A stretch of DNA of 64,000 nt, taken from positions 25,048,001 through 25,112,000 of the forward strand of contig NC_086106.1 in assembly GCF_963921235.1 (NCBI RefSeq). The letters are read 5' to 3'. The notes beneath the pieces were generated by a model. It did not search any database and was not told where the DNA came from. It worked only from the letters and a program-made list of their open reading frames with translations. Numbering within the stretch: position 1 is the stretch's first letter; each line of letters starts with the position of its first letter. Shown piece after piece: positions 38,581-64,000 of this stretch. This DNA is from Mobula hypostoma (lineage: Eukaryota). A program made the translations under genes and the position numbers.

Positions 38581-38623
38581 ATGGGAGTCTTCTTTGTTTT
38601 CACACTCTGGCTCTGCTTACGGC
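38581..38623 (+). CDS. NAR-TCR V leader exon, cassette A (MGVFFVFTLWLCLR, phase 1)
   Basis: ATG, hydrophobic core and C|GTGAGT donor; splices in frame to the acceptor at 38758. Identical in copy B. Confidence 0.93.
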
Positions 38624-38758
38624 GTGAGTACCTTCACACATCCACATTACATTTACGTTAAATCTGTCTGAGACCTCAGAGCTTCAACCGGCTTAAATTA
38701 TTCATGTGGTTCGTCTATGACTGCAATTCACATTTCTCCATATTTTTTTTATTCTTAG

Positions 38759-39052
38759 GTTCTTTGAGTCAGTCGGTGACTCAGAGCCCGTCCATTGTAA
38801 ACTTGAATGAGTGTCAGACTGCCACCATCACCTGCAGTTTCAAGCCTGGTTCGTTTGGTGAATATCGCTTTCTCACTGGAAAGTTCTTCAGGCAGACCAA
38901 CTCAGCGGCCGAACGCAAAGAAGTCACCCGCGGGGGGAGATTTTTTACTTTGATTAAGAAAACTAACATGCAGTTTTCTTTGGAAATTCGGGACCTGCGA
39001 GTGGAAGACAGCGGCACCTATTACTGTCAAGCTGTGTACAGATGGCGTGAAG
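38759..39052 (+). CDS. NTCRV: NAR-TCR V exon (IgNAR-like V), cassette A
   Basis: QSVTQSP..TITC..FFRQ..GGRF..FSLEIRDLRVEDSGTYYCQA. VNAR-like hallmarks: short FR2-CDR2 (47 residues from the Trp position to Cys2), GGR and DLRVEDSGTY. Extra FR1 Cys at 38812-38814; open frame; ends at an RSS. Confidence 0.95.
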
Positions 39053-39090
39053 CACAATGATGGGCTTCGGCTTTGTGCTGTACAAAAACT
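39053..39090 (+). other. V RSS (CACAATG - 22 bp - ACAAAAACT)
   Basis: Counted directly; functions as a 23-type RSS. Confidence 0.95.
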
Positions 39091-39412
39091 TTCGCTGTAG
39101 CTTATTCCTGATTCAGACGGAGAAGAATGGATCTGTGGGTAAGCTCATCTTCCTGTCTCGCTGTGGATAGTCCTGCAGTCCAGCAAACTGTTAGTAGTTG
39201 TATTTTTTTCTGTAGAGTCTTTCTGTTCCCACCTCGCGTGTGAGCAGATATTGTTGCCTACCTGAGGTATGTGTCAATAAATGTCGACAGATGTTGAAAA
39301 ATACACATTCTTGACGCCGACGGGAGACAGAATCATTCCTGAACACTTGGAACCAGTAAACGCCAGCGCTGCGAAATTAATTCCTGCTCGACTGTGTCAT
39401 TGACTCGCCAGT

Positions 39413-39483
39413 AGATTTCAAATTCACGTAAGGTACTGTGTACAGTTGGAACGAACACAGTGGAAGAGATCTGAACAAAAATA
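39413..39483 (+). CDS. NTCRD: NAR-TCR D segment A (coding 39441-39455, TACAGTTGGAACGAA) with 12/12 RSS
   Basis: 5' AGATTTCAA-12-TACTGTG (weak nonamer); 3' CACAGTG-12-ACAAAAATA. Confidence 0.88.
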
Positions 39484-39832
39484 GAAAATAATAAACATAT
39501 AAATAACTCATTGTTTAAACGAGTTATTCTCCATATCGCATACAAAAAAATACAAACCTAGCGTTGTTCACGTTCTAATCTGTTTAGATTATTTTTAATT
39601 TCCATATTGCATATGCATTTTTGATTGACACGTATGCTGTGTGTCTTTTTTCCTTCTCGGAATCGGTGTGCCGTGCGTGTTCCTATTTTATTTTAATTTG
39701 GTTTTGCTTTCTCACAAAGAACATATCGACCTGCCGGCAAATGGGGAGTATTCTTGCTATGTGTTGCATTAACAACTATGGAAACATTGGGAATCCTATT
39801 GTAGCGTTACCTAAGCAGATTCACGTGAGTGT

Positions 39833-39929
39833 AGTTGTTGTATAGTGGAGACTGAGAACAGGATCATTGTGTATCAATGGGAGACTCAGACTCTAGATGG
39901 AAGAGGGACAAAGGTCACGGTCAGTCCCG
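39833..39929 (+). CDS. NTCRJ: NAR-TCR J segment A (coding 39872-39929, YQWETQTLDGRGTKVTVSP) with 23-RSS
   Basis: AGTTGTTGT-23-CATTGTG, GxGTxVTV motif and phase-1 donor G|GTAAGT. Confidence 0.93.
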
Positions 39930-40946
39930 GTAAGTATCCACAGACACCGACGATTCCTCAAATATCTCACCCATGTTCACTATCGTTTGATAGATGATCG
40001 ATTGATTTAAAATCTTGTGTGGTGTGATTCTGTAAACTGAATCTACACTCACTGCGTCGAAAGGCAAGGTGGTAAACTAAATTAACAGAGTGAGATGGAG
40101 AGGGGAATTTCTGCTATGAGTGAAGATGAAATGCTGGTGTAATCGTCGCAGAATAAATCCAACCGACTGATGTCAGACTGTGGGAAATACTGTTAGCAGC
40201 TTAAGACATAAACCGCAAGCAGATAAGATATATATATATGAAAATGTCACCGACATGCATGAAATAATGAATCTTGTTTTCTCCAACTTATTTTCAAATA
40301 GTACAGTGAAATGCAGAACCAAATGATGAAAAATAAGAAAAGAGAAGGGAAGCAAACTTTATATCGCCGCGTGCTGAACTCCAATTGAAAATAATATTAG
40401 CCTTCAGTTGCTTAGAAAATTATCCGACCAATCTGTCCCATTCAGTCTCTTTACTGTGAAGAACATGTTACAATGCAAGAGGCTGTAACTTATCGGGGAT
40501 ATATTATTTAAAAAAAGAAGCAATTCTGGATGGAGCCTCTATCAATTCGAAAAATAAAAAAGGCAAATCCATCATTATTCCGAATGAAACTGATGTTTAA
40601 AATAAACACCGAAGAACTTATATATAAAAAAAAGGAGTTCGGCCCATTTTATGATTGTAGGCCCTTTGCAATTGTTCCATGAATTTAGTTCTTCCTTCCA
40701 CATAGATGTCCAAAATATGAGACATCTTTTGATAATAGAAAGATATCTGCAATTTAGTATGAGTCCCTGATTTTATTTCACTGCAGCAATTCAGATAATA
40801 ATTGACAACGACAATAAATATTGTTTACTCGCATTTCAAATGAAACAAGATTGCGTGAAAGCAAAATCTCCTTAACGTATTTGGGACATGTTATTTTCTG
40901 ACAGTTATCGGTAAATCAGCAATAATTTTCCTTTACATTCATACAG

Positions 40947-41249
40947 AATCCATTGCTCCACCGTCTCAGAGTCCGGAACTACAAACTACACTTGCCGATA
41001 CTGCCATTTTAACCTGTGGATATGACGTGAATTGTCGCAACACAATACACTGGTATCGCCAGCTTCCAGGGCAGGCACCCATATTCCTGCTCCAGGGTCA
41101 AACTTCCGGAGTACAAGATAAGACAAAAAATGCCGGGGAACGAATTACTGGTTTTGTCGATCCTGGTAAGAAAATCAGCCAGCTGACGATCTCCAAAGTG
41201 CAACTGGGTGACGCTGCTGTGTATTACTGTGCAATGAGTCGGTTTGCAG
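40947..41249 (+). CDS. STCRDV: Leaderless supporting TCR-delta V exon, cassette A
   Basis: Pyrimidine tract and CAG acceptor in phase with J. ESIAPPSQ..ILTCGYDVNCRNTIHWYRQLPGQAP..LTISKVQLGDAAVYYCAM; extra CDR1 Cys at 41033-41035. No leader exon recognised between J and this exon. Confidence 0.94.
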
Positions 41250-41288
41250 CACTGTGATGCCGCGCATGGACAGCGCTGTTCAAGAACT
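41250..41288 (+). other. Proximal 23-RSS of supporting V, cassette A (CACTGTG-23-TCAAGAACT)
   Basis: Abuts the V coding end; spacer counted as 23. Confidence 0.9.
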
Positions 41289-41310
41289 AGGGTGATTCTC
41301 GTTACAAGCA

Positions 41311-41349
41311 CACAGTGCTAGGAAGCAGCGAGAGAACAATACAAAAACT
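41311..41349 (+). other. Second (distal) 23-RSS, cassette A (CACAGTG-23-ACAAAAACT)
   Basis: Consensus heptamer, exact 23-bp spacer and 8/9 nonamer; 22 bp after the first RSS ends. Confidence 0.9.
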
Positions 41350-42420: not shown

Positions 42421-42785
42421 AAACTTTATGGAGCCTGAATGTGTCTTCTTAGGTTCTAAAAGCTTTCACCAGTGAGTTTTAACCTGCAGTCGATGCTGAC
42501 TGAGATGTGTTCCGTTGCGTTCAGTTTCTTCCGATAGCATGAATCTCATTAAAATGAAACTGCACGCTTTGGCAATTACATGCTCATCCAATTGAACGGA
42601 TTGCTATAAGTGGAAGTAATCGAGATAACTGGGAGAGGTGCTGCGAAAGAAACATTTGATCGTTAGTTATTATAAGGCAACGTCGTAATTACTCCCACTC
42701 ATTAGAGATAACCTACGATTTGTCATTCCTTGACTTTGCTTTAGTTGCTTTAATTGTTAGACATTGTAGGTTGTCCGATGCTTAA

Positions 42786-46140: not shown

Positions 46141-46159
46141 TGGGGTTCTCGTCCGCGAT
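46141..46159 (+). promoter_or_regulatory. Primer binding site, tRNA-Pro type
   Basis: TGGGGTTCTCGTCCGCGAT resembles the known tRNA-Pro PBS TGGGGGCTCGTCCGGGAT and lies 4 bp after the LTR. Confidence 0.75.
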
Positions 46160-46235
46160 TTTGAACGCTAAATTTGGGACGGAGTAAATTGATTGGGTTA
46201 AAATTCCCGAAAGAAAGAAAAGACAAACAGCAGAA

Positions 46236-47807: not shown

Positions 47808-47810
47808 ATC

Positions 47811-49100
47811 GTGTTCCCAGTCGTGAGATTGACATGTCAGCCTGCCAGCATTGAGGCCCCGCCCATGGACTCACAGGTTCATCACCGGCCCGCGATAGTG
47901 AATTTAGCTGAAACGTTTCTGCCAACCTTGTATGAGACAGGGTGTAGTGAGATAAGAGGTAGTGAGGGAGCTGGGACGGACGTAGCAGTAGCCAGGAAAG
48001 AATTTGTGCAGACGCAGGAGCGAGACAAGGGGCTGATGGTTTTTGCAGAGACAGCTCTCTCTGACACAGCTTTAACAAGGGAACTAGTAGGCTATTGTGC
48101 GTATGAGGAAGTGCTAAGGAAGAAAGGGAAATCAAGGACAGTACCCGCAGATGAGGAATGGGGGGTGGTGCAAAAGAGTTATGGGTATGAGGTTTTTAAC
48201 ATGACCCACGAGGTACCCCCCGGTGGACATTTTGCGGTGCTGGAGGAAACAGTTGGTGGAATCATGAAAGAGATTTACCGGCTGCCCAGGGGGAAGAATG
48301 TTATTGATCATGACCGACGCGAACTGAGACGGTCACCGGCTTTTGATATGCTAACAAACCTAGTCGGTGTTAGCGTGGAAATCAATGAAGCTATGGGCCC
48401 CCTGATAAGAGAATTAAAAACATTTTGCAAAGATTAGTATGGGATCGGTCAGATGGGAGAAGACTATTGTTTTGGCCAGGTCTACTGATAAGGTCTCTCC
48501 CTTAATCCCCGAACAAAGCGAATCTTTAGAAGTAATTAAACGACTCGCACCCGTGTGTTTGATTGTCCCGAGGAAATGCAAAGAACTGGGACGTTGGGTG
48601 ATGTCTGTTACAATAGGGCAGCCTAGTAAAGAACACTCATATATATTGAGTAATTCAGTGACTAAAGGGCTGATGAACACAGAGGTGTGTATTGGCAATT
48701 TAATACGGCTGTCTGACCAGCTTGATAGTGAACCTTGAAAAAAATGAATTCGGCCACACGAGGGTCACTTACCTGGGAATTGTGGTGACACAGGGGCAGC
48801 TGGCAGGGATGCAAGCTACAGTGCAGGCTATCGCTGACCTCCCAACCCCGACAGACAAGAGGGCCCTCAGAAGGCTCTTGGAGATGGTGGGGTACTGCAG
48901 GAAGTTTTGCAATAACTCTGCGGTCAATACCCGTCACCCTCCTACTAAGCCCTTGCGAGAGAAAACTGAGTCGGAATGGGACGAACCTTGTTATTGTAGT
49001 CCGGGACAAAGCCAAATGAGAGGTTACATTGGTCGCAATTCATCAGTGTTTTTGGCCATTATGAAGTTTGCTGAGTTGGAGCCTGGTCTAAGGGATTATT
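47811..49100 (+). pseudogene. pol: Pol remnants: integrase N-terminal HHCC part, then RT C-terminal part
   Basis: THEVPPGGHF (integrase Zn-binding start) lies upstream of NLEKNEFG..VTYLG..AIADLPTP..LRRLLEMVGYCRKF (RT). Confidence 0.7.
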
Positions 49101-49513
49101 AATAACACGTGTCAAAGGAACAGAAAATGTGATGACTGTCTGTCAAGGTGTTGACAGCTTCAAACTCGTTGTCTTAGCCAAATAGCTGTTAAAGATGTAT
49201 ATTTGTGTATGTATCAAATTATGTATTCATGTTTGTAATTTTTACCTCCCGGTAAAAATCCTTAAAGGGGGGAAGTGTGACGAGAATACACATAAAATAT
49301 AATGTTTGCTGGCCTAGGTTAGCATCAGTGACATCAGCAAGTGGTCTGCCACCTGCCCTCAGGGGAAGGAGAGATAAGGAACAATGGAGCAGCGTCTGGA
49401 GATGTGTAATGAAGGGACGGGGGAGAGAGAGATGTCTGGAGCGGCTCCCTCCTTTGAACCTTGAACTGTTTGAAGTGATGGACAGGCGATGCCCCAGCAG
49501 GGGGATAAAAAGG

Positions 49514-51100
49514 GACAGGATCTCTCGGTTGCCACCCAAATCAACTCTGCTTCACATTTCCCTTCCGAGATGTCCATGCATGGCGTCCTCTACTGCCATG
49601 ATGAGGCTAAACTCAGGTTGGAGCAGCAACACCTCATATACCGTTTGGGTAGTCTCCAGCCCCTTGCTATGCACATTGAATTCTCCAACTTCCGGTAATT
49701 CCCTTCTCCCCCTTCCCCCAACCCTGCTTTACTCTGCCCCCTCCCCCAGCTGCCTATCACCTCCCTCATGGTCCGGCTTCCTTCTACTACCCAGTGTGTT
49801 TTCCCCTATTCCTTTTTCACCTGTTCTGCTTATCCCTCCATGCTTCCCCTTCCATACCCCTTTATCTTTTCCCGTTCTGGTTTTTCACCTGGCTCCAACC
49901 AGCCTTCTCCTTCCCACCTTTCCCCCACATTTTTTAGAGGGACTGTTCCCCCTCCCTCTTCAGTCCTGACGAAAGGTTCCGGCCCGAAACGTTCACTGAG
50001 CATTTCTCCTCCACCGTGTTGTGAGTGTAGCTCTATACACCGTCCCCACACATCTAGAGAAGCGGGTTGCTTATGTATGAATGCTGTTCTTGGACTACAG
50101 TTCAGCATTCAAAACTGTAATTCCCTCCAGGCTCAACAACAAGGTCAGAGACCTGGGCTTTCACCCTGCCTTCTGTAGCTAGATCCTGGACTTTCTGTCA
50201 GATCGCCGCCAGTGATAAGAGAGGGGTCCCTCACCACTGCCCCTCTGACCATGAACAGAGGTGGCCCAAATCTATTTGCTGAGGACACCACATGATGGAC
50301 CTAATCTCAAAAAATAATGAGGGAGTCTAGAGAGAACTATTCACCACCTGTGACATATTGGCATCAAGAAAACAACTTCTCTCGCAATGTTGCATAAACA
50401 AAAAAAAGCAAAGAAGCTGGTTGTGGACTACAGGCAGAATGGAGACAGGCTAACTACGATTGACATCAATGGATCTTTAAACCTCAAGTTCTTCGGCATA
50501 CAAATCACTGAGGATCTGACTTGGTCGGTACATACCGGTTGTGTACTAAAAAAGGCAAAACAGTGTATCCTTTACCTCAGAGGGTTGAAGAAGTTTGATA
50601 TTGAATTCCAGATCCCAAGAACGCTCTACTGGAGCACAAATCAGAGCATCCCGACTGGCTGCCTCGCTGCCTGGTGTTGGAACTGTACTTTCCTCAATCG
50701 CTGACCTCTGCAAGGAGCGGTGCGGACAGCGCATCTGTAGGTGCGACCTGCCCACTATTCAGGACATTTAGAAAGAGAGGTGTATAAAAAGGGCACGAAG
50801 GATGATTAGATTCCCAGGACATCCCAAGCACAACATGTTCCAGCTGCTACTGTCCGGGATACGGGACTGCAGCATAAAATCCAGGACCAACAGGATCCAG
50901 AACAGCGTCCTCCACCAAGCCATCAGACGTATTAACTCATGCTGATACAATTGTATTTCTATGTTATTTTGAGTGCCCTGTTGTACATCGTATTTATTAT
51001 ATATTTTTTTTAAATTACGCATTGCATATTTAAAAGGAAATATAACGTGAAGATATGTACTCCTCAAGTAAATGAAGGATGTAGGTAATAAAGTCAATTC
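49514..51100 (+). mobile_element. Penelope 3' end plus Rex1/Babar 3' end (paralog of 35104-36290)
   Basis: SMHGVLYCHDEAKLRLEQQHLIYRLGSLQP; KAKQCILYLRGLKKF. Confidence 0.8.
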
Positions 51101-53594
51101 TATTCGATTCAATTCATATTTCTTCTCTCTCACAGAAACAGACTCGATGCCGAAGTGTGCACTGTGATGTTTCTCTGCTACCTCATGCCCACAGCATTAT
51201 CCAAACTAGCATATCTGTTGTTCGGGGAGATTTCCACAGGACACTCTGCACAGGCTGTTTAAGTCCTTTGTCTTTCTTGTCACCCACTTTCCTGCCTCCG
51301 GTAACTCTGGTGCACCCACCATCTTTATGCCCAATCTATCACGCCCTCAGCCTTTCGAAACATTCAGCCAGTTCATCCAGTTCCAGCTTCCGCTCCATAA
51401 AACGATGTGTAGGAATCTGAAATTGCATGAATTTCATCCATGAGCAGTCGTCAGTGAGACTGGAGAACTCCGAGTCTTCTCTTCCAATATCCAGCAAGGA
51501 GTACATGCAAGTATAAGGTCTCGATAATGATTCCGGCCTGACAGGCCGAATGCTCACTCCTTCCCATACATACTGCATGGTCGCTGAGTTAGTACTGCAT
51601 TTTTTGTGTATTCCGTTTAAGTTACAGTTCATACTGAGCAAATATAAATAATGAAAGGAAATAACAGTAAACAAACTACGGGGAAAAATGCCTGCTACAT
51701 TTCTTATTCTCTTAATCGCGCCTAATCTCGCTGAAACATCGAAGAAGCAATTCCTCAAATGTATTTTTGTAACACTGTGTACTCCACCGACTGCCCTACC
51801 GCTTTCCCCTACCTTCTTCGAATTTGTTCTTGTTATTCAATCCATATCACTTTTCAAACACGAAAATGCCGCGAATTGGTGGGCTATGCATTCGAATCGG
51901 CGAACGGGAGAGAGCTCCGTCTTATCATCTTTGCGATCTCCAGTTGGCAGCAGTTTCAAACACCAAACCGCCGCGAGTAGATGCCTTATTTTCTCAATCG
52001 GCGAACCTGTCAGAGCTATATTTTCTCACGCTTTGTATCTCCGATAAGCTCTGGTTAAAAGATCAAACAGTCGCCAGTTGATGCAGTGTATACTCAATAG
52101 GCAAACTTGAGTGAGCTCCGTCCCAACACGGTTCGGATCTCCAACTGGCGGGAATTTAAATACATATTTCATTAATTTCCATTTCCAAGAGGTCACTTAC
52201 GCGATTGTTCATTGCACATCGTAGCCGAGATTTCACTTACATAATTTTCAATTTATTTATTTCTGTATTCATTAATTCAACCATTCATTTATTCATCTGT
52301 TGATTAAATAACTACATAATTAAATATTTTATTGTTTCTTTATTTATTTGCTAAAATTTCAGTACAGTTGGTGGCGTAATATGCAAGATTATAAAAGACA
52401 AATCAGTAACTATGGAGGTACAAGGAAATTAAAGCTCTGCAGACTATTTGTGGTGAGATCTCAGCGAACCCCAATCTAATCACAAAACCCTAGACAAATC
52501 TACGTTCAAAAGTAAAACAGTGTATTAGTCTTCCTATTCGACTGTGGCACTTTGCATTTCCACTTTTCCCTCAACCATGAGCTTTTTTCCAGTCTCACCA
52601 GTATTAAATACATATTTTGCTATTTTATTGTAGGTCTGCAGAGCAGTACCTCACATTCGATGTTATTTGTTGCATTTGCCTTGCGGATGCGCTGAGCTTC
52701 TCTTTGTTTTCTTCTGGCCTCTTTAACCCGAGGTTTATTCAGTTAGAACAGAGAAAATAGTGCAGTACAGCATAACGTTGAGCCTTCGGAATACGGTGCG
52801 GAAGAGACCGATATAAGTCAGTTCAAGATCCTTCTAACGTTTCGGCACACCTTGCACTTACATTTGTCCTCAATTTATCCTATATCAATAAGGCAGCAAT
52901 TTTCTCCAATATCAGTTATCAGTCTCTACCTACAGCAGTTGCTGCGGAGTCTAGAATTTTACAGGAGGTTTGCATTGGAATTCTCCAAGAATGATGATAA
53001 TAATAATAATAATAAAATAATATCAACAACAACATATCAATAATAATACGATATAACCACTAACATCTCACTAAAACTGTCTTCCACTCAATTTACTGCA
53101 AAGCTGCGGACTCTTGCACTGTCTTTTGCCGCAGTGGATATCAACTTCATTTTATCCGCAACAGACTTCCAGATTTTCCAAACCCCTGGAGACAAACGAC
53201 AAGATTGACATCGAATGTGAGCAGAAGGGAAAGAAGGGTTTTCTGTTTTACACCGTTGGTCAAGCACACTCAGTTTGAAACTGTTTGGCGGCAGATTTCC
53301 TCTCATCCATACTTTCTGTGCAATAAAAGCAGCCATGAGGAATTTGTGCATCCAAAGGCTGAATGTGCCATCACACTCTTCCAAGGCTGAGGGAGAGTTT
53401 GTCAGCTCGTCCCGCGTACATGCCGTCAAGATCAGAGCATAGACTGATTTCAGTCACAAAATATAAGAACTGAAACATACTTGAAAACTCGGGGCACACG
53501 TTACAACATCAATAAAGAACAAATAACTTTTTTTTCCAGAAAAAAAAAAATTCATCAATTTATAGGCCATCTCCGTCACACAGGTTGAACGATA

Positions 53595-53617
53595 GGAAGT
53601 CATGGGTGGGGCTTCCT
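53595..53617 (+). promoter_or_regulatory. Candidate promoter module, cassette B (ETS - GT box - inverted ETS)
   Basis: GGAAGT-cat-GGGTGGGG-CTTCCT; function is inferred. Confidence 0.45.
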
Positions 53618-53776
53618 CACTTGGTTCAAAGACACGAAACAGAATCAAAACCAACAACTGTCACTCAACAACCTGTTGTTAACAGTTTACTCTCCGTATT
53701 TGCAGTACATTCTACCATAACCTTGCTGGCCGTGGGCTTCATCTCCTCGACACTTCAGCAATATTCCTTGTTGACG

Positions 53777-53819
53777 ATGGGAGTCTTCTTTGTTTTCACA
53801 CTCTGGCTCTGCTTACGGC
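53777..53819 (+). CDS. NAR-TCR V leader exon, cassette B
   Basis: Identical to 38581-38623; GTGAGT donor. Confidence 0.93.
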
Positions 53820-53954
53820 GTGAGTACGTTTCACACATCCACATTACATTTACTTTAAATCTGTCTGAGCCCTCTGAGATTCAACCGGCTTAGATTATTC
53901 GTGCGGTTCGTCTGTGACTGCAACTCACATTTCTCCGTTTTTTTTTATTCCCAG

Positions 53955-54248
53955 GTTCACTGAGTCAGTCGGTGACTCAGAGCCCGTACATTGTAAACTT
54001 GAATGAGTGTCAGACTGCCACCATCACCTGCAATTTCCAGCCCGGTTCTTCTGATGAATATCGCTTTCTCACTGGAAAATTCTTCAGGCAGACCAATTCA
54101 GCGGCCGAACGGAAAGAGGTCACCCGCGGGGGGAGATTTGTTACTTGGGTTAAGAAAACTGATATGGAGTTTTCTTTGGCAATTCGGGACCTGCGAGTGG
54201 AAGACAGCGGTACCTACTACTGTCAAGCTATGTACAGATCGCGTGAAG
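53955..54248 (+). CDS. NTCRV: NAR-TCR V exon, cassette B
   Basis: 294 nt like copy A, open frame, 13 aa differences from A, FR1 Cys at 54008-54010. Confidence 0.95.
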
Positions 54249-54286
54249 CACAATGATGGGCTTCGGCTTCGCGCTATACAAAAACT
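54249..54286 (+). other. V RSS (CACAATG-22-ACAAAAACT), cassette B
   Basis: Counted directly. Confidence 0.95.
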
Positions 54287-54612
54287 TCCGCTGTAGCTTA
54301 TTCCTGATTCAGACGGAGCAGAATGGATCTACGGGTTAGCTCATCTTCCTGTCTCGCTGTGGATCCGTCCTGCAGTCCAGCTAACTGTCAGTTTTTTTTT
54401 GTTTGTTTTTTTTTTCCGAATCGTTTACAGTCTTTATGTTCCCATATCGCGTGTGCAAAGATGAGGTGTGTGTCAATAAATGTCGACAGCGAATTAAAAA
54501 AAACACATTCTTGTCGCCAACGAGAGACAGAATCGTTCCTGAACAATTGGAACCAGAAAACGCCAGCGCTGCGAATTTAATTCCTGCTCGACTCTTTCAT
54601 TGATTCGCCAGC

Positions 54613-54684
54613 AGATTTCAAATTCACATAAGGTACTGTGTACATTTCGGAACGAACACAGTGGAAGAGATCTGTACCAAAATA
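54613..54684 (+). CDS. NTCRD: NAR-TCR D segment B (coding 54641-54656, TACATTTCGGAACGAA) with 12/12 RSS
   Basis: AGATTTCAA-12-TACTGTG on the 5' side; CACAGTG-12-ACCAAAATA on the 3' side. Confidence 0.86.
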
Positions 54685-55035
54685 GAAAATAATAAATATA
54701 TAAATAACTAATTATTTAAACGAGTTGTTCTCCATATCCCATACAAAAAAAAAATGCTAACCTGGAGTTGTTCACCTTCTAATCTGTTTAGTTTATTTTA
54801 AATTTCCATATTGCATATGTATTTTGATTGACATGTATGCTATGCGTTTTTTTTTCTTTTCGGTGTTGGTGTGCGGTGCGTGTACCTATTTTGTTTAAAC
54901 TTGGTCTTGCTTTCTCACAACGAATCTATCGAACTGCGGGCAAATGGGGATTATTCTTGCTCGGTGTTGCATTAACAACCCTCGAAACATTGGGAAGCCT
55001 ATTGTAGCGTTTCCTAAGCGGATTCACGTGAGTGT

Positions 55036-55132
55036 AGCTGTTGTATAGTGGAGACTGAGAACAGGATCATTGTGTATGATTGGAGGACTGATCCTCTAGA
55101 TGGAAACGGAACAACGGTCACGGTCAGACCCG
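55036..55132 (+). CDS. NTCRJ: NAR-TCR J segment B (coding 55075-55132, YDWRTDPLDGNGTTVTVRP) with 23-RSS
   Basis: AGCTGTTGT-23-CATTGTG; G|GTAAGT donor. Confidence 0.93.
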
Positions 55133-55425
55133 GTAAGTATCCAGAGACATCTACCATTCTTCAAATATCTCACCCATTTTCACTATCCTTTGATAGATGA
55201 TCGATTCGATTGATTTAAAATCTTGTGTTGTGATTCTGTAAACTGAATCTACACTCACCGTGTAGAAAGGCAAGGTGGTAAACTGAATTAACAGAGGGAG
55301 ATGAAGAGGGAAATTTCTGCAATGAGTAAGGATGAAATGCTCACAGAATGAATCCAACCGACTGCTGTCAGACTGTGGGAAAAATTGTTAGCAGCTTAAG
55401 GCATAACCCGCAAGCAGAATATATA

Positions 55426-56923
55426 ATTTTTCAAAACTCGTTAGATTCTGGACTAGTTCCTGGGGATTGGAGGGTGGCTAATGTAACCCCACTTTTTAAA
55501 AAAGGAGGGAGAGGGAAACCAGGGAATTATTGACCGGTTAGCCTAACGTCGGTGGTGGGGAAACTGCTGGAGTCAGTTATCAAAGATGTGATAACAGCAC
55601 ATTAGGAAAGCGGTGAAATTATCGGACAAAGTCAGCATGGATTTGTGAAAGGAAAATCATGTCTGACGAATCTCATAGAATTTTTTGAGGATGTAACTGG
55701 TAGAGTGGATAGGGGAGAACCAGTGGATGTGGTATATTTGGATTTTCAAAAGGCTTTTGACAAGGTCCCACACAGGAGATTAGTGTGCAAACTTAAAGCA
55801 CACGGTATTGGGGGTAAAGTATTGATGTGGATGGAGAATTGGTTAGCAGACAGGAAGCAAAGAGTGGGAATAAACGGGACCTTTTCAGAACGGCAGGCGG
55901 TGACTAGTGGGGTACCGCAAGGCTCAGTGCTGGTACCCCAGTTGTTTACAATACATATTAATGACTTGGATGGGAGAATTAAATGCAGCATCTCCAAGTT
56001 TGCGGATGACACGAAGCTGGGTGGCAGTGTTAGCTGTGAGGAGGATGCTAAGAGGATGCAGAGTGACTTGGATAGGATGCGTGAGTGGGCAAATTCATGG
56101 CAGATGCAATTTAATGTGGATAAATGTGAAGTTATCCACTTTGGTGGCAAAAATAGGAAAACAGATTATTATCTGAATGGTGGCCGATTAGGAAAAGGGG
56201 AGGTGCTACGAGACCTGGGTGTCATTATACACCAGTCATTGAAAGTGGGCATGCAGGTACAGCAGGCGGTGAAAAAGGCGAATGGTATGCTGGCATTTAT
56301 AGCGAGAGGATTCGAGTACAGGAGCAGGGAGGTACTACTGCAGTTGTACAAGGCCTTGGTGAGACCACACCTGGAGTATTGTGTGCAGTTGTGGTCCCCT
56401 AATCTGAGGAAAGACATCCTTGCCATAGAGGGAGTACAAGAAGGTTCACCAGATTGATTCCTGGGATGGCAGGACTTTCATATGAAGAAAGACTGGATGA
56501 ACTGGGCTTGTACTCGTTGGAATTTAGAAGTTTGAGGGGGGATCTGATTGAAACGTATAAAATCCTAAAGCGTATGGACAGGCTAGATGCAGGAAGATTG
56601 TTGCCGATGTTGGGGAAGTCCAGAACAAGGGGTCACAGTTTGAGGATAAAGGCGAAGCCTTTTAAGACCGAGATTAGGAAAAAAACTTCTTCACACAGAG
56701 AGTGGTGAATCTGTGGAATTCTCTGCCACAGGAAACAGTTGAGGCCAGTTCATTGGTTATATTTAAGAGGGAGTTAGATATGGCCCTTTTGGCTACGGGG
56801 ATCAGAGGGTATGGAGGGAAGGCTGGGGCGGGGTTCTGAGTTGGATGGTCAGCCATGATCATAATAAATGGCGGTGCAGGCTCGAAGGGCCGAATGGCCT
56901 ACCCCTGCACCTATTTTCTATGT

Positions 56924-56928
<5 letters not shown>
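55426..56928 (+). mobile_element. Relatively young 5'-truncated CR1 inserted in the J - supporting V intron of cassette B
   Basis: 270-aa RT ORF at 55645-56457 (YLDFQKAFDKVPH, GVPQGSVL, FADDTK). Absent from copy A; sits in a (TA)n tract. Confidence 0.92.
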
Positions 56929-56960
<32 letters not shown>

Positions 56961-57661
56961 TATATCACAGAGATACAAGAAAGAATGAATCTTGTTTTCT
57001 CCGATTTATTCTCAAGCAGTACAGTGAATTGCACAACCAATTGATGAAAAATTAAGAAAACAGAAGGGAGCAAAACCTTTATATCGCCGCGTGCTAAACT
57101 CCAACTGAAAATAAATCTTTGCCTTCAGCTACTTAAAAAATTATCTGACCAATATGTCCCGTTCAGTCTCATTACTGTGAAGAACATGTTACAGCGGAAG
57201 AGGCTGGAAGTTATGGGCGATATGTTATTTTAAAAAAAGAAGCAATGCTGGATGGAGAATCTATCATTTCGAAAAATAAAACAGGCAAATTCATCATTAT
57301 TCCGAATGAAACTGACCTTTAAAATAAACACCACAGAACTGATAAAAAGGACTTCGGCCCACTTTATGTTTGTAGGTTCTCTGCAATTGTTCCATGAAAT
57401 TAGTTCTTCCTTCTGAATAGCTGTCCAAAATATGAAACATGTTTTGATAATAGCAAGATGTCCGCAATTTAGGATGAGTCCCTGATTTTATTTCACTGCA
57501 GCAAATCAGATAATAATTGTCAACGGCAATAAATATTGTTTACTCACATTTCAAATGAAACAAGTTTGCGTGAAAGAAAAATCTCCTTAACGTATTTAGG
57601 ACGTTTTCTTTTCTGTCAGTTATCGATAAATCAGCAAAAATCTTGTTTTACATTCATACAG

Positions 57662-57964
57662 AATCCATTTCTCCAGCGTCTCAGACTCCTGAACTGCAAA
57701 CTACACTTGCCGATACTGCCATTTTAACCTGTGGATATGACCTGTATTGTCGCAGCACAATACATTGGTATCGCCAGCTTCCAGGGCAGGCACCCATATT
57801 CCTGCTCCAGGGTCAAACTTTTGGAGCACAAGATAAGACAAAAAATGCCGGAGAACGAATTACTGGTTTAGTCGATCCTGGTAAGAAAATCAGCCAGCTG
57901 ACGATCTCCAAAGTGCAACTGGGTGACGCTGCTGTGTATTACTGTGCAATGAGTCGGTTTGCAG
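57662..57964 (+). CDS. STCRDV: Leaderless supporting TCR-delta V exon, cassette B
   Basis: 303 nt like copy A, open frame, CDR1 Cys at 57748-57750, 9 aa differences from A. Confidence 0.94.
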
Positions 57965-58003
57965 CACTGTGATGCCGCGCATGGACAGCGCTGTTCAAGA
58001 ACT
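57965..58003 (+). other. Proximal 23-RSS of supporting V, cassette B (CACTGTG-23-TCAAGAACT)
   Basis: Identical to copy A. Confidence 0.9.
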
Positions 58004-58025
58004 AGGGTGATTCTCGTTACAAGCA

Positions 58026-58064
58026 CACAGTGCGAGTTAGCAGCGAGAGAACAATACAAAAAGT
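58026..58064 (+). other. Second (distal) 23-RSS, cassette B (CACAGTG-23-ACAAAAAGT)
   Basis: Consensus heptamer and 23-bp spacer retained although the 5' part of the spacer differs from A. Confidence 0.87.
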
Positions 58065-58939
58065 CATTTGGTTTTATCATATAAATACACCACAGCTGAG
58101 CACAGAGACAACGGCAAGAAACCGAAGTGTGGTTGGATTTTTAGTAGAATGATAACAGAGGAAATAAAAGTACCACGATCAACACCCAGAATATGCTGGG
58201 AGAAATCATTATGTCCTGATGGAAGTTCTTGGTTCGAAACCTCATTTCCATGGAAGTGGCCGTATCTACCAATTCCTCAAATTTCTACTTATCGAAGACA
58301 CACAACTTGCAAGAATATATTCCTGGAGCAAACAGGCACGATTGCCTTCAGGAAATTCGCATTTTAGATCAGAAGTGCGTAAGGGATAGCAACGGAATTG
58401 TGCCAATCAGCCTATCGAGTGTGGCCCGCCATTCCATCATTATTGTTTCCGGTTCCTAATACGTTCTCCAGTATATCCATGAGGTACATGCAATCTACCA
58501 GCTATTTTGAATGAAGGGACATCGCAAATCCGTTTGCGCCGTGTGAAAGTCGGCATAAAAGTAACGAACATTGAACCGTTACAAATTCCAAACAATAAAT
58601 CCGTACTCTATTGTTTTGCAATTATACGGCATCACGAACTACAGGTATCATTACGATTCCAGAAACATATAAACATAGAAAACCTACAGCACAATAGAGG
58701 TCCTTCGGCCCTCAAAGTTTTGCCGAACATGTCGCTACCTCAGAAATTACTAGGGTAACCTATAGCCTCTATTTTTTTTCTAATCTCCATGTACCTATAC
58801 TAAAGTCTCTTAAAATATCCTATCGTATCCGCATCCATCAGCGTTTCCGGCAGCCCATTCCACACAATCACCATTTTTTTGTGACAGCTCAGGGACGAAC
58901 TCCGGGGATTGGTTAGACATTGTAAGTTGTCCGATGATT

Positions 58940-59800
58940 AACAGTACGGAAACAGGCCATCTCGGCCCTTCTAGTCCGTGCCGGACTCTTACTCTCACCT
59001 AGTCCCACCGACCTGTACTAACCCCATAACTCTCCATTCCTTTCCTGCCAATATAACTGTACAGTTGAATTTTAAACCACAACATCGAACTTGCTTCAAC
59101 CACTTCTGCTGGAAGCTCGTCCCACACAGCTACCACTCTCGGAGTAAAGAGGTCCCCCCTTATGTTACCCAAAAACTTTTGCCCGTTTACTCTCAACACA
59201 TGTCCTCTTGTTTGAATCTCCCACACTCTCAATAGAAAAATCCTATACACGTCAACTCTATCTATCCGCCTCATAATTTTACATATCTCTACCCCTCAAA
59301 CTTCAACGTTTCAAAGAATAAAGACCCAAATCCTTCAACTTTTCTCTGTAACATACGTGATGAAACCCAGGTAACATTCTCGTAAATCTTCCCTGTACTC
59401 TCTCGATCTTGTTCTCGGTGTGAGAGAATATTTTGTCAGGACCCGGAAACTTATCCACTTGTATATTCCTTAAGAGCGCCAGTATTTCCTCGTCTTTAAT
59501 CATCATAGTTACCAGAACATCCCTACCTGTTTCCCTTACCTTACACAATTCAATATCCTTCTCCTCAGTGGTTACCGAGGAAAAGAATTTGTTCAGAATC
59601 TCCCCCATCTCTTTTGGCTCCACACATAGCTGTCCACTCTAATTCTCTAAGGGACCAATTTTATCCCTGACTATCCTTCTGCTATTAATATAACTGTAGA
59701 AACCTTTGGGATTTATGTTCACCTTACTTGCCAAAGCAAAGTCATATATTCTTTTAGCTTTTTTAATTCATTTCTTAAGATTCTTTTTCCTTCTTTATAT
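58940..59800 (-). mobile_element. CR1 ORF2 remnant (paralog of 42786-44620, further deleted)
   Basis: Minus ORFs 58999-59274 and 59303-59623; the latter is a fusion across an internal deletion. Confidence 0.8.
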
Positions 59801-62289
59801 TCCTCGATTAGGCTCCGGAAAAATCAGGGTTGTCAGTGGTTTCTGGGGTTGCGCAGTTCGAAGGGCTGGAGTGGGTTGTACTGCGCTGCATCATGAAATA
59901 AACAACTATATACACCTTGCAGGGAATTAAAACAACATTTACTAATGAAGACATATGGTACGTAAATAGGTGCATAATCGATTGCAAACAGACAACAGTA
60001 CTTAATGTATCTTATTTTCTCTAGAAACACTCAAATACCATTTTGAGTTTTTCGCTTCCAAACTGGGAATTTTATTTTAAACTCAATGGCCATTTAGAAC
60101 GTATTTTCGTAAACTGTTTATTTTTAATAAGATGAGTTGAAAGCGCGTGGAAAGCAATTCACAATTTAAATTGCAAATACCAACTACTCACCAGTCATTT
60201 CGTGGGAAGGAGAGTGAAACATCCTGGGAAATAGGTGATATCAGAAGCGAAGTGTTTACATCGATACTCTGCGACTCTACAGCTTACATCAGGAATCACA
60301 GGAATCAAAATGCAATGAACTGGTCGAACGCGTGTACGATCGTTAGTTAAGGAAGATATGCTTTCGAATCACAATGAGGAGCAAGCCTGCAGCCCGTTGT
60401 TACGAAGCAGAATCTTATTCTGGGAGAATTATCCCGAAGCCGGCAAAAGCTACTGTGGTGCCGATGAACAGGAAATCGGCTACAGGCTGCCAAAATAGAT
60501 GGTGAGTCTTTAATGAGGAGAGGCCGCAGTAGTTTTGAGAAAAGTTTCACTTGCCAATAGTTTCACAAAAAACAGTGAGAAATCAAAACGTGTGATACTG
60601 GTTAGTCCAAATTTTTTTCTGCATCTATGACCCGTATTCAATTCGCACCGTTGCTTGTAAAGAGATTGCACTTTCTCCCCGGACCACCTGGGATTCATGT
60701 CTGATCCTCTGGTTTTCTTTCAACAACCCGACGTCTGGTAATATTTAATAGGCTGATTGGTCGTTCTAAATTATAGCATTATTAGGTTAGGATTAGATCC
60801 GGTGTTTGCCGGGCTGCGTACCTCGATGTGCAGAAAGGGCAAATTCCTCACTGTGTATCCAAATATAAATAAATAATCAATCAAGAAAACAAACATAAGT
60901 AAATAAATAAGCATCGGTTTTCCCTGCAAATCTTACAGTGGGTGCGAAGTCGGCATGAATTTGTATTTTTAAGAAATTTATCCAAAGCTAACGAATGACA
61001 AATAATTTCAATTCAATGCTTACGCTATCTGTATTTTTGCAAAATCGATGAAACTGTACAGAATGCATGCCAGGAGCTCCTACAAAACTGCATCGATTGG
61101 TTAATCCCTCTCGCTGAAAAGATGTAACAAAAGTTCTCTACAACAACATATACTATTACACGTCCCTTATTTTGCCATTTTTAAATTAATTTCTGCCCAG
61201 TGTTCACAGTGAAGGTGCAGGAGGGTGAGTGTGGTCATGGTGCAATTTTTGCGTTACAGTCGCGACAGTCCAAGTCATGCATCGTAAATCTGTTAACTGC
61301 AGGAAACGGTTGAGTTTGCGACAGGCTTTCGATTTCAAATTTCCTTCTTGATCTTACCTTTGTGTACGTCTTGAATGTTGAGCGCCGATTACATAATATG
61401 AACAGAGGGATGCAATGAGAATATTGTCTTTTGAAAGATCATTTTGAAAATTTCAGTAATAAAACGAGAAAGTGCCAGATCCACGATATTATTCGGAAGG
61501 AATGTGATATTCCAGAGAGTACAGGTAATTAAGCAGTAAAGCTCGCCTGACTGGAAGTGCGAGTGACCGTCAATTTAAAGATCGGATTGGAATGTTCCTG
61601 AATAGTCTCATCCTCCTAGGATAGTTGAGTATTTATAGTAGTGGCAGAATGAGACGTAGTATCTGCTGAATTGTTTTAAACGCCATTACTTAGTTATTTG
61701 TTTGCTTCCTTGGTTACTTATCCTTTCCTCTTTATTTGCGGAACTATCAGTCTTCGTCTGTGCCATAATTTGTTACTTATTTTTTGAAAATATTTCTATT
61801 TATGTACTTAACATTCGTTTATGTGTTTATATATTTATCTATTTATGTTATTAATTCAGTAAGTGTGTTTCTTATTTGTTAATTAACTGATAATTATTTA
61901 TTTATGTATTATTTATTCCAACGAGGAGGTAGTCCTTCAGTATAAAACCATACCATGTTGACCAAAATTTATAATTCATACACGCTCCCTTTTCGGTGTC
62001 TCGGGAAGAGAAAAGTTCTACTTGGTAGATCAAAGCCGTAAGTTGCCTTAACTGTTTACTTAGAATTAACTTGAAGGCATTTTTGCAGCTGACCGACGGA
62101 TTTTTCAATAAAAAAAACACAGTAGCAGAAGAAATGTAAGCTTGCAGTATTTTGATGAAAATTTAAAAAGCCATTCTAAATCGAGGGAAATTATTCAGTT
62201 CCAGACTGAGTTCAATACACCATTTGATACCTTATTTCATTGGGCCGCTGTCATTTACTGATCCAAATATTTTCCCCGCTTGTTCGTTG

Positions 62290-64000
62290 TCATAGATTAG
62301 ATTAGATGTAACGTTATCGTCATTGTGCCTAGTACAGAAGCAAAGCCAATGAAATGCAGTTAGCATCTGACCAGAAATGCAAAGAATCGTGTTACTTAGA
62401 AAATAACTGCGAATAAAAAGAAAGTGCTACAGCTCACAAATATAAAAGTATTGAGACAGTGCAAAATGGGTGCATTCCTGCTTAGCGCTGTGATGTGAAG
62501 TTTACCGGGGGCACAGCCTCAGGGAAGAAGCTCTTCCTGTGCCTGCCGGTGCGGGAGCGGAGGGTCCTGTAGCGCCTACCGGATGGGAGGAGAGTAAAAA
62601 ATCCATGGTTAGGGTGAGATGCTTCCATGATAATGCCCTGCCCAGGCAGCGTTTATGGTAAATATGCTCAATGGTGTGCAAATGGGTGCTGATAATCCGC
62701 TGGGCAGTTTTCACCACACGCAGGCGTGCTTTGCGGTCCGATACTAGACAATTGCCATATGTTCTCAATGTATGTTCTCAATGGTATGGGGGTAAAAGTC
62801 CGTCAGTATCCAGGGGCAGATTTGAGCTTCCTTGATGCTCCGCAGGAAATAAGGCGCTGTTGTGCCTTTTTGATCAGGATGGAGGAGTTCAGGGACCAGC
62901 TGAGATCCTCGGAAATGTGGAAACCAAGGAATTTGAAGCTTGATACACGCTCCACTACAGATCCGATGGGGAGGTGAGTGTGGCTCCTAGCATGCCTGAA
63001 GTCCACAATGATCTCCTTAGTCTTCTGGGTGTTGAGGGCCAGGATGTTGTCGGCACACTACGCAGCCAGTTGCCGGAACTTGTCCCTGTAGGCCGTCTCG
63101 GCATCCTCTCTGATCAGGGCAATCAACGTGGCGTCTTCTGCGAACTAGATTATGGAGTTAGGACCATGTACAAGAACGCAGTCATTGGGGAAAAGGCAGT
63201 ACAGATGAGGGCTCAGCACATAGCCTTGAAGCACGCCAGTGTTCAAGGTGAGAGTGGAGGAGGAGAGGTTGTCTAATTTAACTGATTGGGGTCTGTTAAT
63301 TGGAAAGTCCATGGTCCAGTTACAGAGGGATGAGTTGATACGATGCTGGCAAAGTTTGGCCATCAGCTTGGAGGGGATCACAGTATTGAATGCAGAACTA
63401 AAGTCAATAAACAGCATTCTGACGCAGGAGTCGTGGCTTTCCAGGTGCGTGAGGACAGAGTGAAAAGCTTTGGAGATAGCGTCCTCTGTAGACCTGTTGT
63501 GCAATAGGCAAATTGATGGGGGTCCAGGGTAATCGGTAGACAGCATTTCAGATGTGATATAACCAGTCTGTCAAATAACTTTTCAATGATGAGGGTGAGT
63601 GCAACTGGACGGAAGTCATTCAGGCCTGTGGCAATGCAATGCTTTCGGCACTGGCACGATGGTGACGATCCTGAAGCTTGTAGGGACAACTGCCTGGGAC
63701 AGGAACAGATTAAAATGTCCATGAAGACCCCGGCCAGCTGGCCTGAACAGACTCTGAGCTCATGGCCAGGTTTTCCATCCGAACCAGTTGCCTTCCGTAC
63801 GTTCACCCTGCTCAGTGTGGCGCAAACTTAGAAGGTGGAAAGTCAGAGAGGCAGTTCTCCAAGTGGGAGATCCGCTTTGAAGGTGACCTCCTTCTTTTGT
63901 CGATCAAAGCGTAGAAGTAATTGAGCTCATCAGGGAGGGAAGTAGAGCTGGACGGGGCTCAGTACTAGGTGGTTTGAAGTCTGTAATGATCTGTATGCCA
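62290..64000 (-). mobile_element. Rex1/Babar LINE (paralog of 3190-5065)
   Basis: [21 protein letters not shown]; DPHQFAY; same insertion point as in copy 0. Confidence 0.85.

What the first reader, a model, noticed from the sequence alone, without database searches (positions are those of the whole stretch)
53777..58064. Second intact NAR-TCR cassette B with a distinct binding surface
Seen: every element of A is present with open frames, canonical splice sites and usable RSS, while V, D, J and supporting V all differ. The unit of duplication is the whole L-V-D-J-supporting V module. Inference: each NAR V stays paired with its own supporting V, allowing co-evolution.
Basis: partly seen in the sequence, partly recalled or inferred. 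Interest (0 to 1): 0.75.

Follow-up and report, generated by a model that had tools for sequence, protein, structure and literature searches.

The report
Second intact ray NAR-TCR gene cassette
This is a second, apparently working germline copy of the known shark-and-ray "NAR-TCR" gene unit, which stacks an antibody-like domain on a T-cell-receptor domain. It is a diverged tandem duplicate of its neighbour, so it is an ordinary new member of a known family.

Summary
Window 53777-58064 carries every part of a NAR-TCR cassette, with open frames, GT/AG splice sites and 12/23-compatible recombination signals. The parts are leader, NAR-type V, one D, J and a leaderless supporting V followed by two 23-RSS.

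B is a tandem paralogue of cassette A (38581-41349), not a haplotig:
- neutral DNA differs by 11%;
- no assembly gap lies between A and B;
- B has a private 1.5-kb LINE fragment in its J-supporting V intron.

Both copies look selectively maintained. The 698 frame-bound coding bases hold no indels where 5.2 are expected, the RSS are conserved, and V has dN/dS 0.31.

V differences sit at positions that are hypervariable across the family. J is the most diverged part and the supporting V the least.

V and supporting V share their duplication history (P<0.0005). That shows co-inheritance, not co-adaptation. A 163-bp tract of perfect A/B identity at the supporting V end hints at gene conversion between cassettes.

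The scan has already reported several such cassettes elsewhere in this genome.

The parts
53777..53819 (+). Leader exon (ATG, 14 codons + 1 nt), donor GTGAGT at 53820
   Evidence: It is 100% identical to A and lies within a 92-bp identity run, 53736-53827. The leader resembles those of sawfish and shark NAR-TCR gene models.
53820..53954 (+). Leader intron (135 nt), acceptor ...TTATTCCCAG
   Evidence: It is 90.3% identical to A.
53955..54248 (+). NAR-type V exon (98 codons, counting the first codon, which is split with the leader exon)
   Evidence: - The frame is open.
- Pfam V-set match, E 4e-9.
- The best single-domain PDB sequence matches are IgNAR V domains.
- An AlphaFold model (pLDDT 82.6) has IgNAR V domains as its top 50 PDB fold matches.
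- It carries the a-b loop Cys, and F in place of the canonical Trp.
54249..54286 (+). V recombination signal, 23-type (CACAATG / 22 nt / ACAAAAACT)
   Evidence: Heptamer and nonamer are identical to A; the spacer has 3 changes.
54613..54640 (+). D 5' 12-RSS (heptamer TACTGTG on + strand, 12-nt spacer, weak nonamer AGATTTCAA)
   Evidence: 27 of 28 bases match A. The nonamer matches consensus at 4 of 9 positions, by my own count.
54641..54656 (+). Single D segment (16 nt; 15 nt in A)
   Evidence: There are no stops in any frame.
54657..54684 (+). D 3' 12-RSS (CACAGTG / 12 / ACCAAAATA)
55036..55074 (+). J 23-RSS (reverse orientation: nonamer, 23-nt spacer, heptamer CATTGTG)
   Evidence: 38 of 39 bases match A.
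55075..55132 (+). NAR-TCR J (19 codons + 1 nt; motif D-G-N-G-T), donor GTAAGT at 55133
   Evidence: It is 79.3% identical to A, with 11 non-synonymous changes to 1 synonymous. It resembles the sawfish J.
55133..57661 (+). J-to-supporting V intron (2529 nt; 1017 nt in A)
55419..56945 (+). B-private 5'-truncated LINE (CR1/L2-like) reverse-transcriptase fragment inside that intron, inserted at an (AT)n microsatellite
   Evidence: - It aligns to a gap in A.
- Pfam RVT_1 match, E 3.3e-25.
- My crude scan found no strong splice-like sites and no excess of poly(A) hexamers.
57662..57964 (+). Leaderless supporting V exon (TCR alpha/delta-type V, Cys in CDR1)
   Evidence: - It is in frame with J across the splice.
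- Pfam V-set match, E 4.4e-12.
- Its nearest named proteins are avian TCR alpha V regions and elasmobranch two-V gene models.
- It is 95.4% identical to A.
57965..58003 (+). Supporting V RSS1, 23-type (CACTGTG / 23 / TCAAGAACT)
   Evidence: It is 100% identical to A. The same position is conserved in sawfish.
58026..58064 (+). Second 23-RSS (CACAGTG / 23 / ACAAAAAGT), 61 bp after RSS1
   Evidence: It is 89.7% identical to A, with the changes in spacer and nonamer. Sawfish has the same 61-bp offset.
57871..58033 (+). 163-bp tract of perfect identity with cassette A (candidate gene-conversion patch)
38581..41349 (+). Cassette A, the paralogue used for comparison
49514..59413 (+). Copy B of the segmental duplication that carries the cassette (copy A: 35105-43229)
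   Evidence: Self-BLAST, 82-90% identity.

Best explanation
Cassette B is an intact germline NAR-TCR unit in a ray T-cell-receptor locus. It arose with cassette A by tandem duplication of a segment of roughly 8-10 kb, and both copies have since been kept functional by selection.

The mechanism below is inferred from the anatomy and from what is known of NAR-TCR.
- In a developing T cell, RAG joins V (23-RSS) to D (12-RSS on both sides) and D to J (23-RSS). Because V and J both carry 23-type signals, the D is obligatory.
- Independently, the supporting V (23-RSS) joins TCR-delta D and J segments downstream.
- Transcription starts at the leader.
- The J donor is spliced in phase 1 to the acceptor of the leaderless supporting V.
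- The result is a delta chain with two V domains. The distal one is a single-domain, IgNAR-like binder.

Since the duplication, change has been concentrated in the distal binder. It falls in CDR1, the HV4 region, the CDR3 base, D and above all J. The supporting V and all recombination signals have been conserved. The supporting V 3' end with RSS1 was probably homogenised by gene conversion.

Across elasmobranchs the V and its supporting V are inherited as one module.
For: Shown here:

- Complete anatomy with open frames, canonical splice sites and 12/23-compatible signals.
- NAR-type V. The best single-domain PDB sequence matches are IgNAR V domains (E about 1e-11 to 1e-12). The AlphaFold model (pLDDT 82.6) has IgNAR V domains as its top 50 PDB fold matches.
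- The family's marker residues are present: an a-b loop Cys and a Phe in place of the canonical Trp in V, and a CDR1 Cys in the supporting V. The Cys pair occurs in 73 of 77 family members and the Phe in 75 of 77. The markers are as listed in PMC1845163.
- Paralogue, not allele. Divergence is 11.0% over 4856 neutral sites, and there are private transposon insertions.
- Selection on both copies. The 698 frame-bound coding bases hold no indels where 5.2 are expected (P=0.006). The RSS show 11 changes in 211 bases (P=0.003). The supporting V exon shows 14 in 303 (P=6e-5). V has dN/dS 0.31 (Fisher P=0.008).
- Module inheritance. Paralogue distances of V and supporting V within species correlate at r=0.67, against 0.26 +/- 0.06 after re-pairing within species (P<2e-4). 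The two maximum-likelihood trees share 27 of 74 splits, against 7.8 +/- 1.9.
- A and B are sisters in both trees and nest with the same sawfish subgroup.
- A sawfish germline cassette has the same plan.
Against:
- B carries a 1.5-kb sense-strand LINE fragment in the intron that must be spliced out.
- Three of B's nonamers are slightly weaker than A's.
- No TCR-delta D, J or C segment lies in the window, so linkage to the delta constant region rests on earlier notes and the literature.
- The selection tests compare the pair. They cannot show that B, rather than A, is still under constraint today.
- The gene-conversion reading of the 163-bp tract is an inference.
Confidence: 0.8

Rival explanations
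1. B is structurally intact but silent or little used. It would be a young pseudogene in waiting, because the LINE insertion lengthens the critical intron and three of its nonamers have drifted from consensus.
For: - The LINE fragment at 55419-56945 lies in sense orientation inside the J-supporting V intron.
- Nonamers are weaker at the D 3' RSS, the J RSS and RSS2.
- No expression data exist for B.
Against: - All frames, splice sites, heptamers and cysteines are intact at 11% neutral divergence, and there are no coding indels.
- The LINE adds no strong splice-like sites and no excess of poly(A) hexamers.
- In the V tree B's terminal branch is shorter than A's (0.036 against 0.097). B's J is the one that resembles the sawfish J.
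Confidence: 0.12
2. B is an allelic haplotig of A that the assembler placed in tandem.
For: The two copies are collinear and lie only 15 kb apart.
Against: - Divergence is 11% at neutral sites, with 37 indel events.
- Each copy has private LINE or LTR insertions.
- The only N run in the window is at 17909-18109, outside the A-B interval.
- Sawfish has the same tandem layout, with cassettes about 11.9 kb apart.
Confidence: 0.02
3. The cassettes are not closed V-supporting V pairs in use. Upstream V_A could join D_B, or the J_A donor could splice to the supporting V of B. Gene conversion would also move sequence between supporting Vs. Pairing would then be combinatorial, and co-evolution of fixed pairs would be weak.
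For: - Signal types allow V_A (23) to join the 5' 12-RSS of D_B, and both cassettes have the same orientation.
- There is a 163-bp identity tract at the supporting V 3' end.
- Nearest-paralogue concordance across the family is 29 of 64, well above chance (12.5) but far from complete.
- Supporting V paralogues are less diverged than V paralogues in 7 of 10 species.
Against: V and supporting V trees are strongly congruent, so exchange in the germline is limited. I have no somatic data either way.
Confidence: 0.2

Closest known systems
NAR-TCR (doubly rearranging TCR-delta) cassettes of cartilaginous fish, first described in nurse shark (Criscitiello, Saltis and Flajnik 2006, PNAS 103:5036). That paper is not held in the library. 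I know it through PMC1845163, PMC3457774, PMC12227049 and PMC5931798.
   Same: - A leader-bearing NAR-type V with an a-b loop Cys and no canonical Trp.
- Its own D and J.
- A J spliced to a leaderless TCR-delta-type V with a Cys in CDR1.
- Two independent V(D)J rearrangements.
- Multiple copies in the TCR locus.
   Different: Nothing differs in kind. Three details are specific to this ray.

- The J motif is D-G-N-G or D-G-R-G, where sharks have D-G-S-G.
- The supporting V CDR1 around the Cys reads D-L-Y-C-R-S or D-V-N-C-R-N, where the family has a nearly invariant S-G-F-C-x-Y.
- The intron carries a LINE fragment.
Sawfish (Pristis pectinata) cassette LOC127576469 (protein P0234, locus L001)
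   Same: - It is the closest sequence found, at 64% (V) and 56-58% (supporting V) identity.
- It has the same V-23 / 12-D-12 / 23-J plan and a similar J.
- It has the same double 23-RSS with a 61-bp offset.
- Its cassettes are in tandem.
   Different: It is a different species. Its inter-RSS piece is not conserved between sawfish paralogues, whereas it is identical between A and B here.
IgNAR V domains (shark single-domain antibodies, e.g. PDB 2ywy, 1ves, 2coq)
   Same: The V fold and sequence family are the same. These are the best PDB matches by sequence (single-domain chains) and by fold.
   Different: IgNAR clusters have three D segments and IgNAR constant exons, and they have no supporting V. 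Here there is one D, and the J splices to a TCR-type V. CDR1 is three residues longer than in 2ywy.
TCR-mu of marsupials and monotremes
   Same: It is a three-domain TCR chain with a diverse N-terminal V on a supporting V (PMC3457774).
   Different: Its V domains are VH-related, and it is regarded as convergent (PMC3457774). It is not related by descent.

Membership tests
NAR-TCR cassette | N-terminal V with its own leader and an IgNAR-type V domain | tested here: met
   - Leader exon with an ATG and GT/AG intron.
- The best single-domain PDB sequence matches are IgNAR V domains.
- The model's top 50 fold matches are all IgNAR V domains.
NAR-TCR cassette | Extra cysteine in the a-b loop of the NAR V, and loss of the canonical Trp of the WYRK/Q motif (features listed in PMC1845163) | tested here: met
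   The a-b loop reads N-E-C and the motif reads F-F-R-Q. The Cys pair is present in 73 of 77 family members and the Phe in 75 of 77.
NAR-TCR cassette | Own D and J with recombination signals, and a J that ends in a splice donor | tested here: met
   One D flanked by 12-RSS, a J with a 23-RSS and a GTAAGT donor.
NAR-TCR cassette | A downstream supporting V without a leader, entered by a splice acceptor in phase with J, with a Cys in CDR1 | tested here: met
   The acceptor lies at 57660-57661 and the frame is continuous from J. CDR1 reads L-Y-C.
NAR-TCR cassette | Supporting V is of TCR alpha/delta type and carries a 23-RSS for joining to TCR-delta D/J | tested here: met
   A 23-RSS is present, in fact two. 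The nearest named proteins are avian TCR alpha V regions and elasmobranch NAR-TCR gene models, some of which include a TCR constant region, such as P0050.
NAR-TCR cassette | Location in the TCR-delta locus and use with C-delta | not testable with these tools
   There is no D-delta, J-delta or C-delta in the 64-kb window. Earlier scan notes place many cassettes in this region, but I could not read DNA outside the window.
NAR-TCR cassette | Expressed as a doubly rearranged, spliced transcript | not testable with these tools
No protein of this species is in the protein collections.
IgNAR heavy-chain cluster | V followed by three D segments, a J and IgNAR constant exons, with no second V | tested here: not met
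   Only one D flanked by RSS lies between V and J. The J is followed by a V exon, not a C exon. The six-frame scans found no other Ig V-type domains in the window; constant exons were not searched for.

The most novel reading that the evidence does not exclude
The tandem cassettes may work as a small translocon and not as closed pairs. The compatible signals would let V_A join D_B. The J_A donor could splice to the supporting V of B. A gene-conversion patch keeps the supporting V 3' ends and their first RSS identical. Pairing of V with supporting V would then be partly combinatorial in somatic cells, even though the module is inherited as a unit.
Probability: 0.2. Interest if true: 0.55.

Novelty: new member of a known kind. 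Interest (0 to 1): 0.3.

Why it matters
NAR-TCR is the only known T-cell receptor that carries a shark-antibody-type single-domain binder. How its germline repertoire grows is poorly documented outside a few sharks.

This pair shows a clean case in a ray. The whole module duplicates. The distal binder then diversifies in CDR1, the HV4 region and especially J, while the supporting domain and the recombination signals are held nearly constant.

The comparison of 75 public gene models shows that module-wise inheritance is general in sharks and rays. Many of those models carry misleading names.

None of this changes the known picture. It adds germline alleles that would help repertoire analysis and single-domain binder discovery.

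Tried and rejected
Expression of B, cognate against skipped splicing, and read depth all remain untested.
- The search for homologous proteins with the V exon alone found no candidates. The length window excludes the two-domain models. A first try with the supporting V used the wrong frame.
- Searching with the supporting V alone returned only avian TCR alpha V regions at 34-42% identity.
- The first AlphaFold run, with a two-row alignment, was too poor to use (pLDDT 57.5). I repeated it with 73 rows.
- I did not submit a spliced two-domain construct for modelling. The inter-domain disulfide and interface therefore remain untested.
- An octamer-like motif upstream of B's leader is not conserved in A, so I dropped it.
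- The 92-bp identity run over the leader is not significant after allowing for the number of start positions (P about 0.13).
- Enrichment of V differences in IgNAR-defined loops set beforehand is only a trend (8 of 13, P=0.09). The test based on family entropy is the stronger one.
- The J dN/dS of about 4 is not significant by Fisher's test (P=0.26). Only the excess of total J divergence over the neutral rate is (P=0.02).
- The Criscitiello 2006 and Ott 2021 papers are not held.
Full report
**What is there**

Reading 53500-58400 and checking coordinates by script gives a complete cassette on the + strand.

| Element | Coordinates | Details |
|---|---|---|
| Leader exon | 53777-53819 | donor GTGAGT |
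| Leader intron | 53820-53954 | 135 nt |
| V exon | 53955-54248 | |
| V signal | 54249-54286 | CACAATG / 22 / ACAAAAACT |
| D | 54641-54656 | single 16-nt segment |
| D 5' signal | 54613-54640 | 12-type; heptamer good, nonamer 4 of 9 |
| D 3' signal | 54657-54684 | 12-type |
| J signal | 55036-55074 | 23-type |
| J | 55075-55132 | donor GTAAGT |
| J-supporting V intron | 55133-57661 | 2529 nt |
| Supporting V exon | 57662-57964 | acceptor CATACAG; no leader |
| RSS1 | 57965-58003 | 23-type |
| RSS2 | 58026-58064 | 23-type |

- The leader plus V frame and the J plus supporting V frame are both open. The J donor and the supporting V acceptor are both in phase 1.
- The signal types are V-23, 12-D-12 and 23-J. 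This makes the D obligatory and fits the 12/23 rule.
- The finding's start and end match the ATG and the last base of the second nonamer.

**Identity of the parts**

- The V exon matches Pfam V-set.
- Its best single-domain matches in the PDB sequence search are IgNAR V domains (2ywy, 8hgi and 1ves, E 4e-12 to 2e-11).
- With a 73-row alignment AlphaFold gives pLDDT 82.6. The top 50 Foldseek matches in the PDB are all IgNAR V domains.
- PMC1845163 lists the marks of NAR-TCR, citing the 2006 description. They are a leader, a Cys in the a-b loop and loss of the canonical Trp in the NAR V, and no leader plus a CDR1 Cys in the supporting V. All are present in B.
- In my alignment of 77 V-supporting V pairs the Cys pair occurs in 73 and the Phe-for-Trp in 75.
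- The supporting V's nearest named proteins are avian TCR alpha V regions and elasmobranch two-V gene models, some of which continue into a TCR constant region.

**Relation to cassette A**

- A six-frame scan finds exactly four V exons in the window: A's pair and B's pair.
- Self-BLAST shows that A 35105-42161 (with a further block to 43229) matches B 49514-58873 (to 59413) at 82-90% identity. The duplicated segment therefore includes about 3.5 kb upstream and at least 1 kb downstream of the cassette.
- Between the copies lies an LTR retrotransposon (45272-49525). Its LTRs are 254 bp long and 95% identical, and it has a Gag-like ORF.
- B alone carries a 5'-truncated LINE reverse-transcriptase fragment at 55419-56945. 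It sits in an (AT)n microsatellite of the J-supporting V intron.
- The only N run in the window is at 17909-18109.
- Neutral divergence is 11.0% over 4856 sites, with 37 indel events in all.

Together these rule out a haplotig for practical purposes.

**Element-by-element comparison**

| Element | Identity to A (%) |
|---|---|
| Leader exon | 100 |
| V exon | 91.8 |
| V RSS | 92.1 |
| D 5' RSS | 96.4 |
| J RSS | 97.4 |
| J | 79.3 |
| Supporting V exon | 95.4 |
| RSS1 | 100 |
| RSS2 | 89.7 |
| Introns and spacers | 88-91 |

- The 698 frame-bound coding bases hold no indel where 5.2 are expected (P=0.006).
- The signals as a set are conserved (P=0.003).
- The supporting V exon is conserved even at synonymous sites (P=6e-5).
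- V has dN/dS 0.31 (P=0.008).
- J has 11 non-synonymous changes and 1 synonymous. Its total divergence exceeds the neutral rate (P=0.02), although the dN/dS contrast itself is not significant.

These figures show that the pair has been under selection since the duplication. They cannot prove that B is still in use today.

**Where the V differences lie**

- The 13 replacements are at V-exon residues 11, 26, 28, 32, 33, 62, 64, 65, 69, 71, 75, 92 and 95.
- On the model's secondary structure they fall as follows:
  - 26, 28, 32 and 33 in the end of strand B and CDR1;
  - 62, 64 and 65 in strand D;
  - 69 in the D-E loop that corresponds to HV4;
  - 71 and 75 in strand E;
  - 92 and 95 at the CDR3 base;
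  - 11 in the A-B segment.
- Across 77 family members these positions are more variable than the rest (mean entropy 2.0 against 1.2 bits, P=0.001).
- The HV2 region is identical in A and B.

- A HMMER scan of 1.84 billion representatives with V_B found two-V-domain proteins in sharks and a sawfish.
- A profile search then gave 75 such gene models from 16 named species plus two of unknown source. Examples are sawfish 8, thorny skate 6, Mustelus 11 and Hemiscyllium 10. None is from the window's species; the best match is 64%.
- Within species, paralogue distances for V and for supporting V correlate at r=0.67. After re-pairing partners within species the value is 0.26 +/- 0.06, and none of 5000 shuffles reached the observed value.
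- The closest V paralogue is also the closest supporting V paralogue in 29 of 64 cases, against 12.5 expected by chance.
- The maximum-likelihood trees of the two domains share 27 of 74 splits, against 7.8 +/- 1.9 after re-pairing (maximum 16 in 2000 shuffles).
- A and B are sisters in both trees (support 99 and 100). In both they group with the same four sawfish cassettes.

So the module is the unit of inheritance across elasmobranchs. Two caveats apply. The rows are automatic gene models, and the domains are short, so many forks are unresolved.

**Limits of the co-evolution inference**

- Shared history is not co-adaptation.
- Between A and B the V a-b loop around the extra Cys is identical. 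The supporting V CDR1 differs at three positions that flank its Cys.
- Both copies depart from the family's nearly invariant S-G-F-C-x-Y motif at that site.
- A tract of 163 identical bases (57871-58033) spans the last 94 nt of the supporting V, RSS1, the 22-nt piece between the signals and the second heptamer.
- This tract is unlikely at the neutral rate (3e-5). It is also unlikely at the local rate of 18 differences in 403 nt (P=0.0015).
- In sawfish the piece between the two signals is not conserved between adjacent paralogues (68% against 82-85% in flanks). Constraint alone is therefore a poor explanation. I favour a gene-conversion patch, but that is an inference.
- The signal types would also allow V_A to join D_B, and the J_A donor could in principle reach B's supporting V. 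Cognate pairing in somatic cells is therefore not guaranteed by the DNA.

**Comparison with a sawfish germline cassette** (locus L001)

- The exon order and the signal types are the same.
- The J is similar, and it is B's J, not A's, that resembles it.
- A second 23-RSS lies 61 bp after the first.
- A neighbouring supporting V lies 11.9 kb upstream, so cassettes are in tandem there as well.

**What could not be done**

No reads could be laid, so expression of B is open.
- Earlier notes of this scan report cassette A as transcribed and list intact cassettes at seven other places in this genome. I treat these as leads only.
- The LINE fragment adds no strong splice-like sites and no excess of poly(A) hexamers by a crude scan.
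- B's nonamers at the D 3' RSS, the J RSS and RSS2 are each one mismatch weaker than A's.

**Verdict**

This is a genuine, intact, selectively maintained second NAR-TCR cassette. It is a new member of a kind known since 2006 (PMC3149040, PMC5931798, PMC12227049). The module-duplication reading is supported and generalised. The co-evolution reading is not shown.

Noticed in passing
window 57871-58033 (= 41156-41318 in A): A 163-bp tract of perfect A/B identity spans the supporting V 3' end, RSS1, the inter-RSS piece and the second heptamer. It is significant even at the local substitution rate (P=0.0015). The inter-RSS part is not conserved between sawfish paralogues, so gene conversion is the likelier cause.
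   Followed up: partly
window 55419-56945: A 5'-truncated CR1/L2-like LINE fragment (RVT_1, 283-aa open stretch) lies in sense orientation. It is private to cassette B's J-supporting V intron and was inserted at an (AT)n microsatellite.
   Followed up: yes
window 45272-49525: An LTR retrotransposon lies between the cassettes. It has 254-bp LTRs 95% identical to each other, and a Gag-like ORF at 46188-47804 (SCAN plus zinc knuckle). By LTR divergence it is younger than the cassette duplication.
   Followed up: partly
window 55075-55132 vs 39872-39929; L001 11285-11343: J is the fastest-diverging coding part, with 11 non-synonymous changes to 1 synonymous. B's J (Y-D-W-R-T...D-G-N-G-T-T-V-T) resembles the sawfish J, so A's J appears to be the derived one.
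   Followed up: partly
window 57740-57760 and 41025-41045 (supporting V CDR1): The motif S-G-F-C-x-Y around the CDR1 cysteine is nearly invariant in 75 elasmobranch gene models. Here it reads D-L-Y-C-R-S in B and D-V-N-C-R-N in A. The NAR V a-b loop of this ray also departs from the family consensus.
   Followed up: partly
window 58026-58064; L001 13125-13163: The second 23-RSS behind the supporting V sits 61 bp after the first, in this ray and in sawfish alike. Between A and B its spacer and nonamer change at about the neutral rate (4 of 32), while RSS1 is identical. Shark gene models that read through the signals suggest rows of such repeats (P0051, P0259).
   Followed up: partly
proteins P0045, P0193, P0203, P0245, P0247 and others: Public RefSeq models of two-V NAR-TCR genes in many sharks and rays carry misleading automatic names. 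Examples are kappa light chain-like, lachesin-like, DSCAM-like and gamma-1 heavy chain-like.
   Followed up: no
window 345-4923 and 59422-64000; 2-1363 and 43921-45272: There are long LINE-like repeat copies at 90% and 96% identity. One lies downstream of each cassette and one at the window start. They are transposons, not further cassette copies.
   Followed up: partly
window 17909-18109: Assembly gap or masked run of 201 N. I left it untouched.
   Followed up: no
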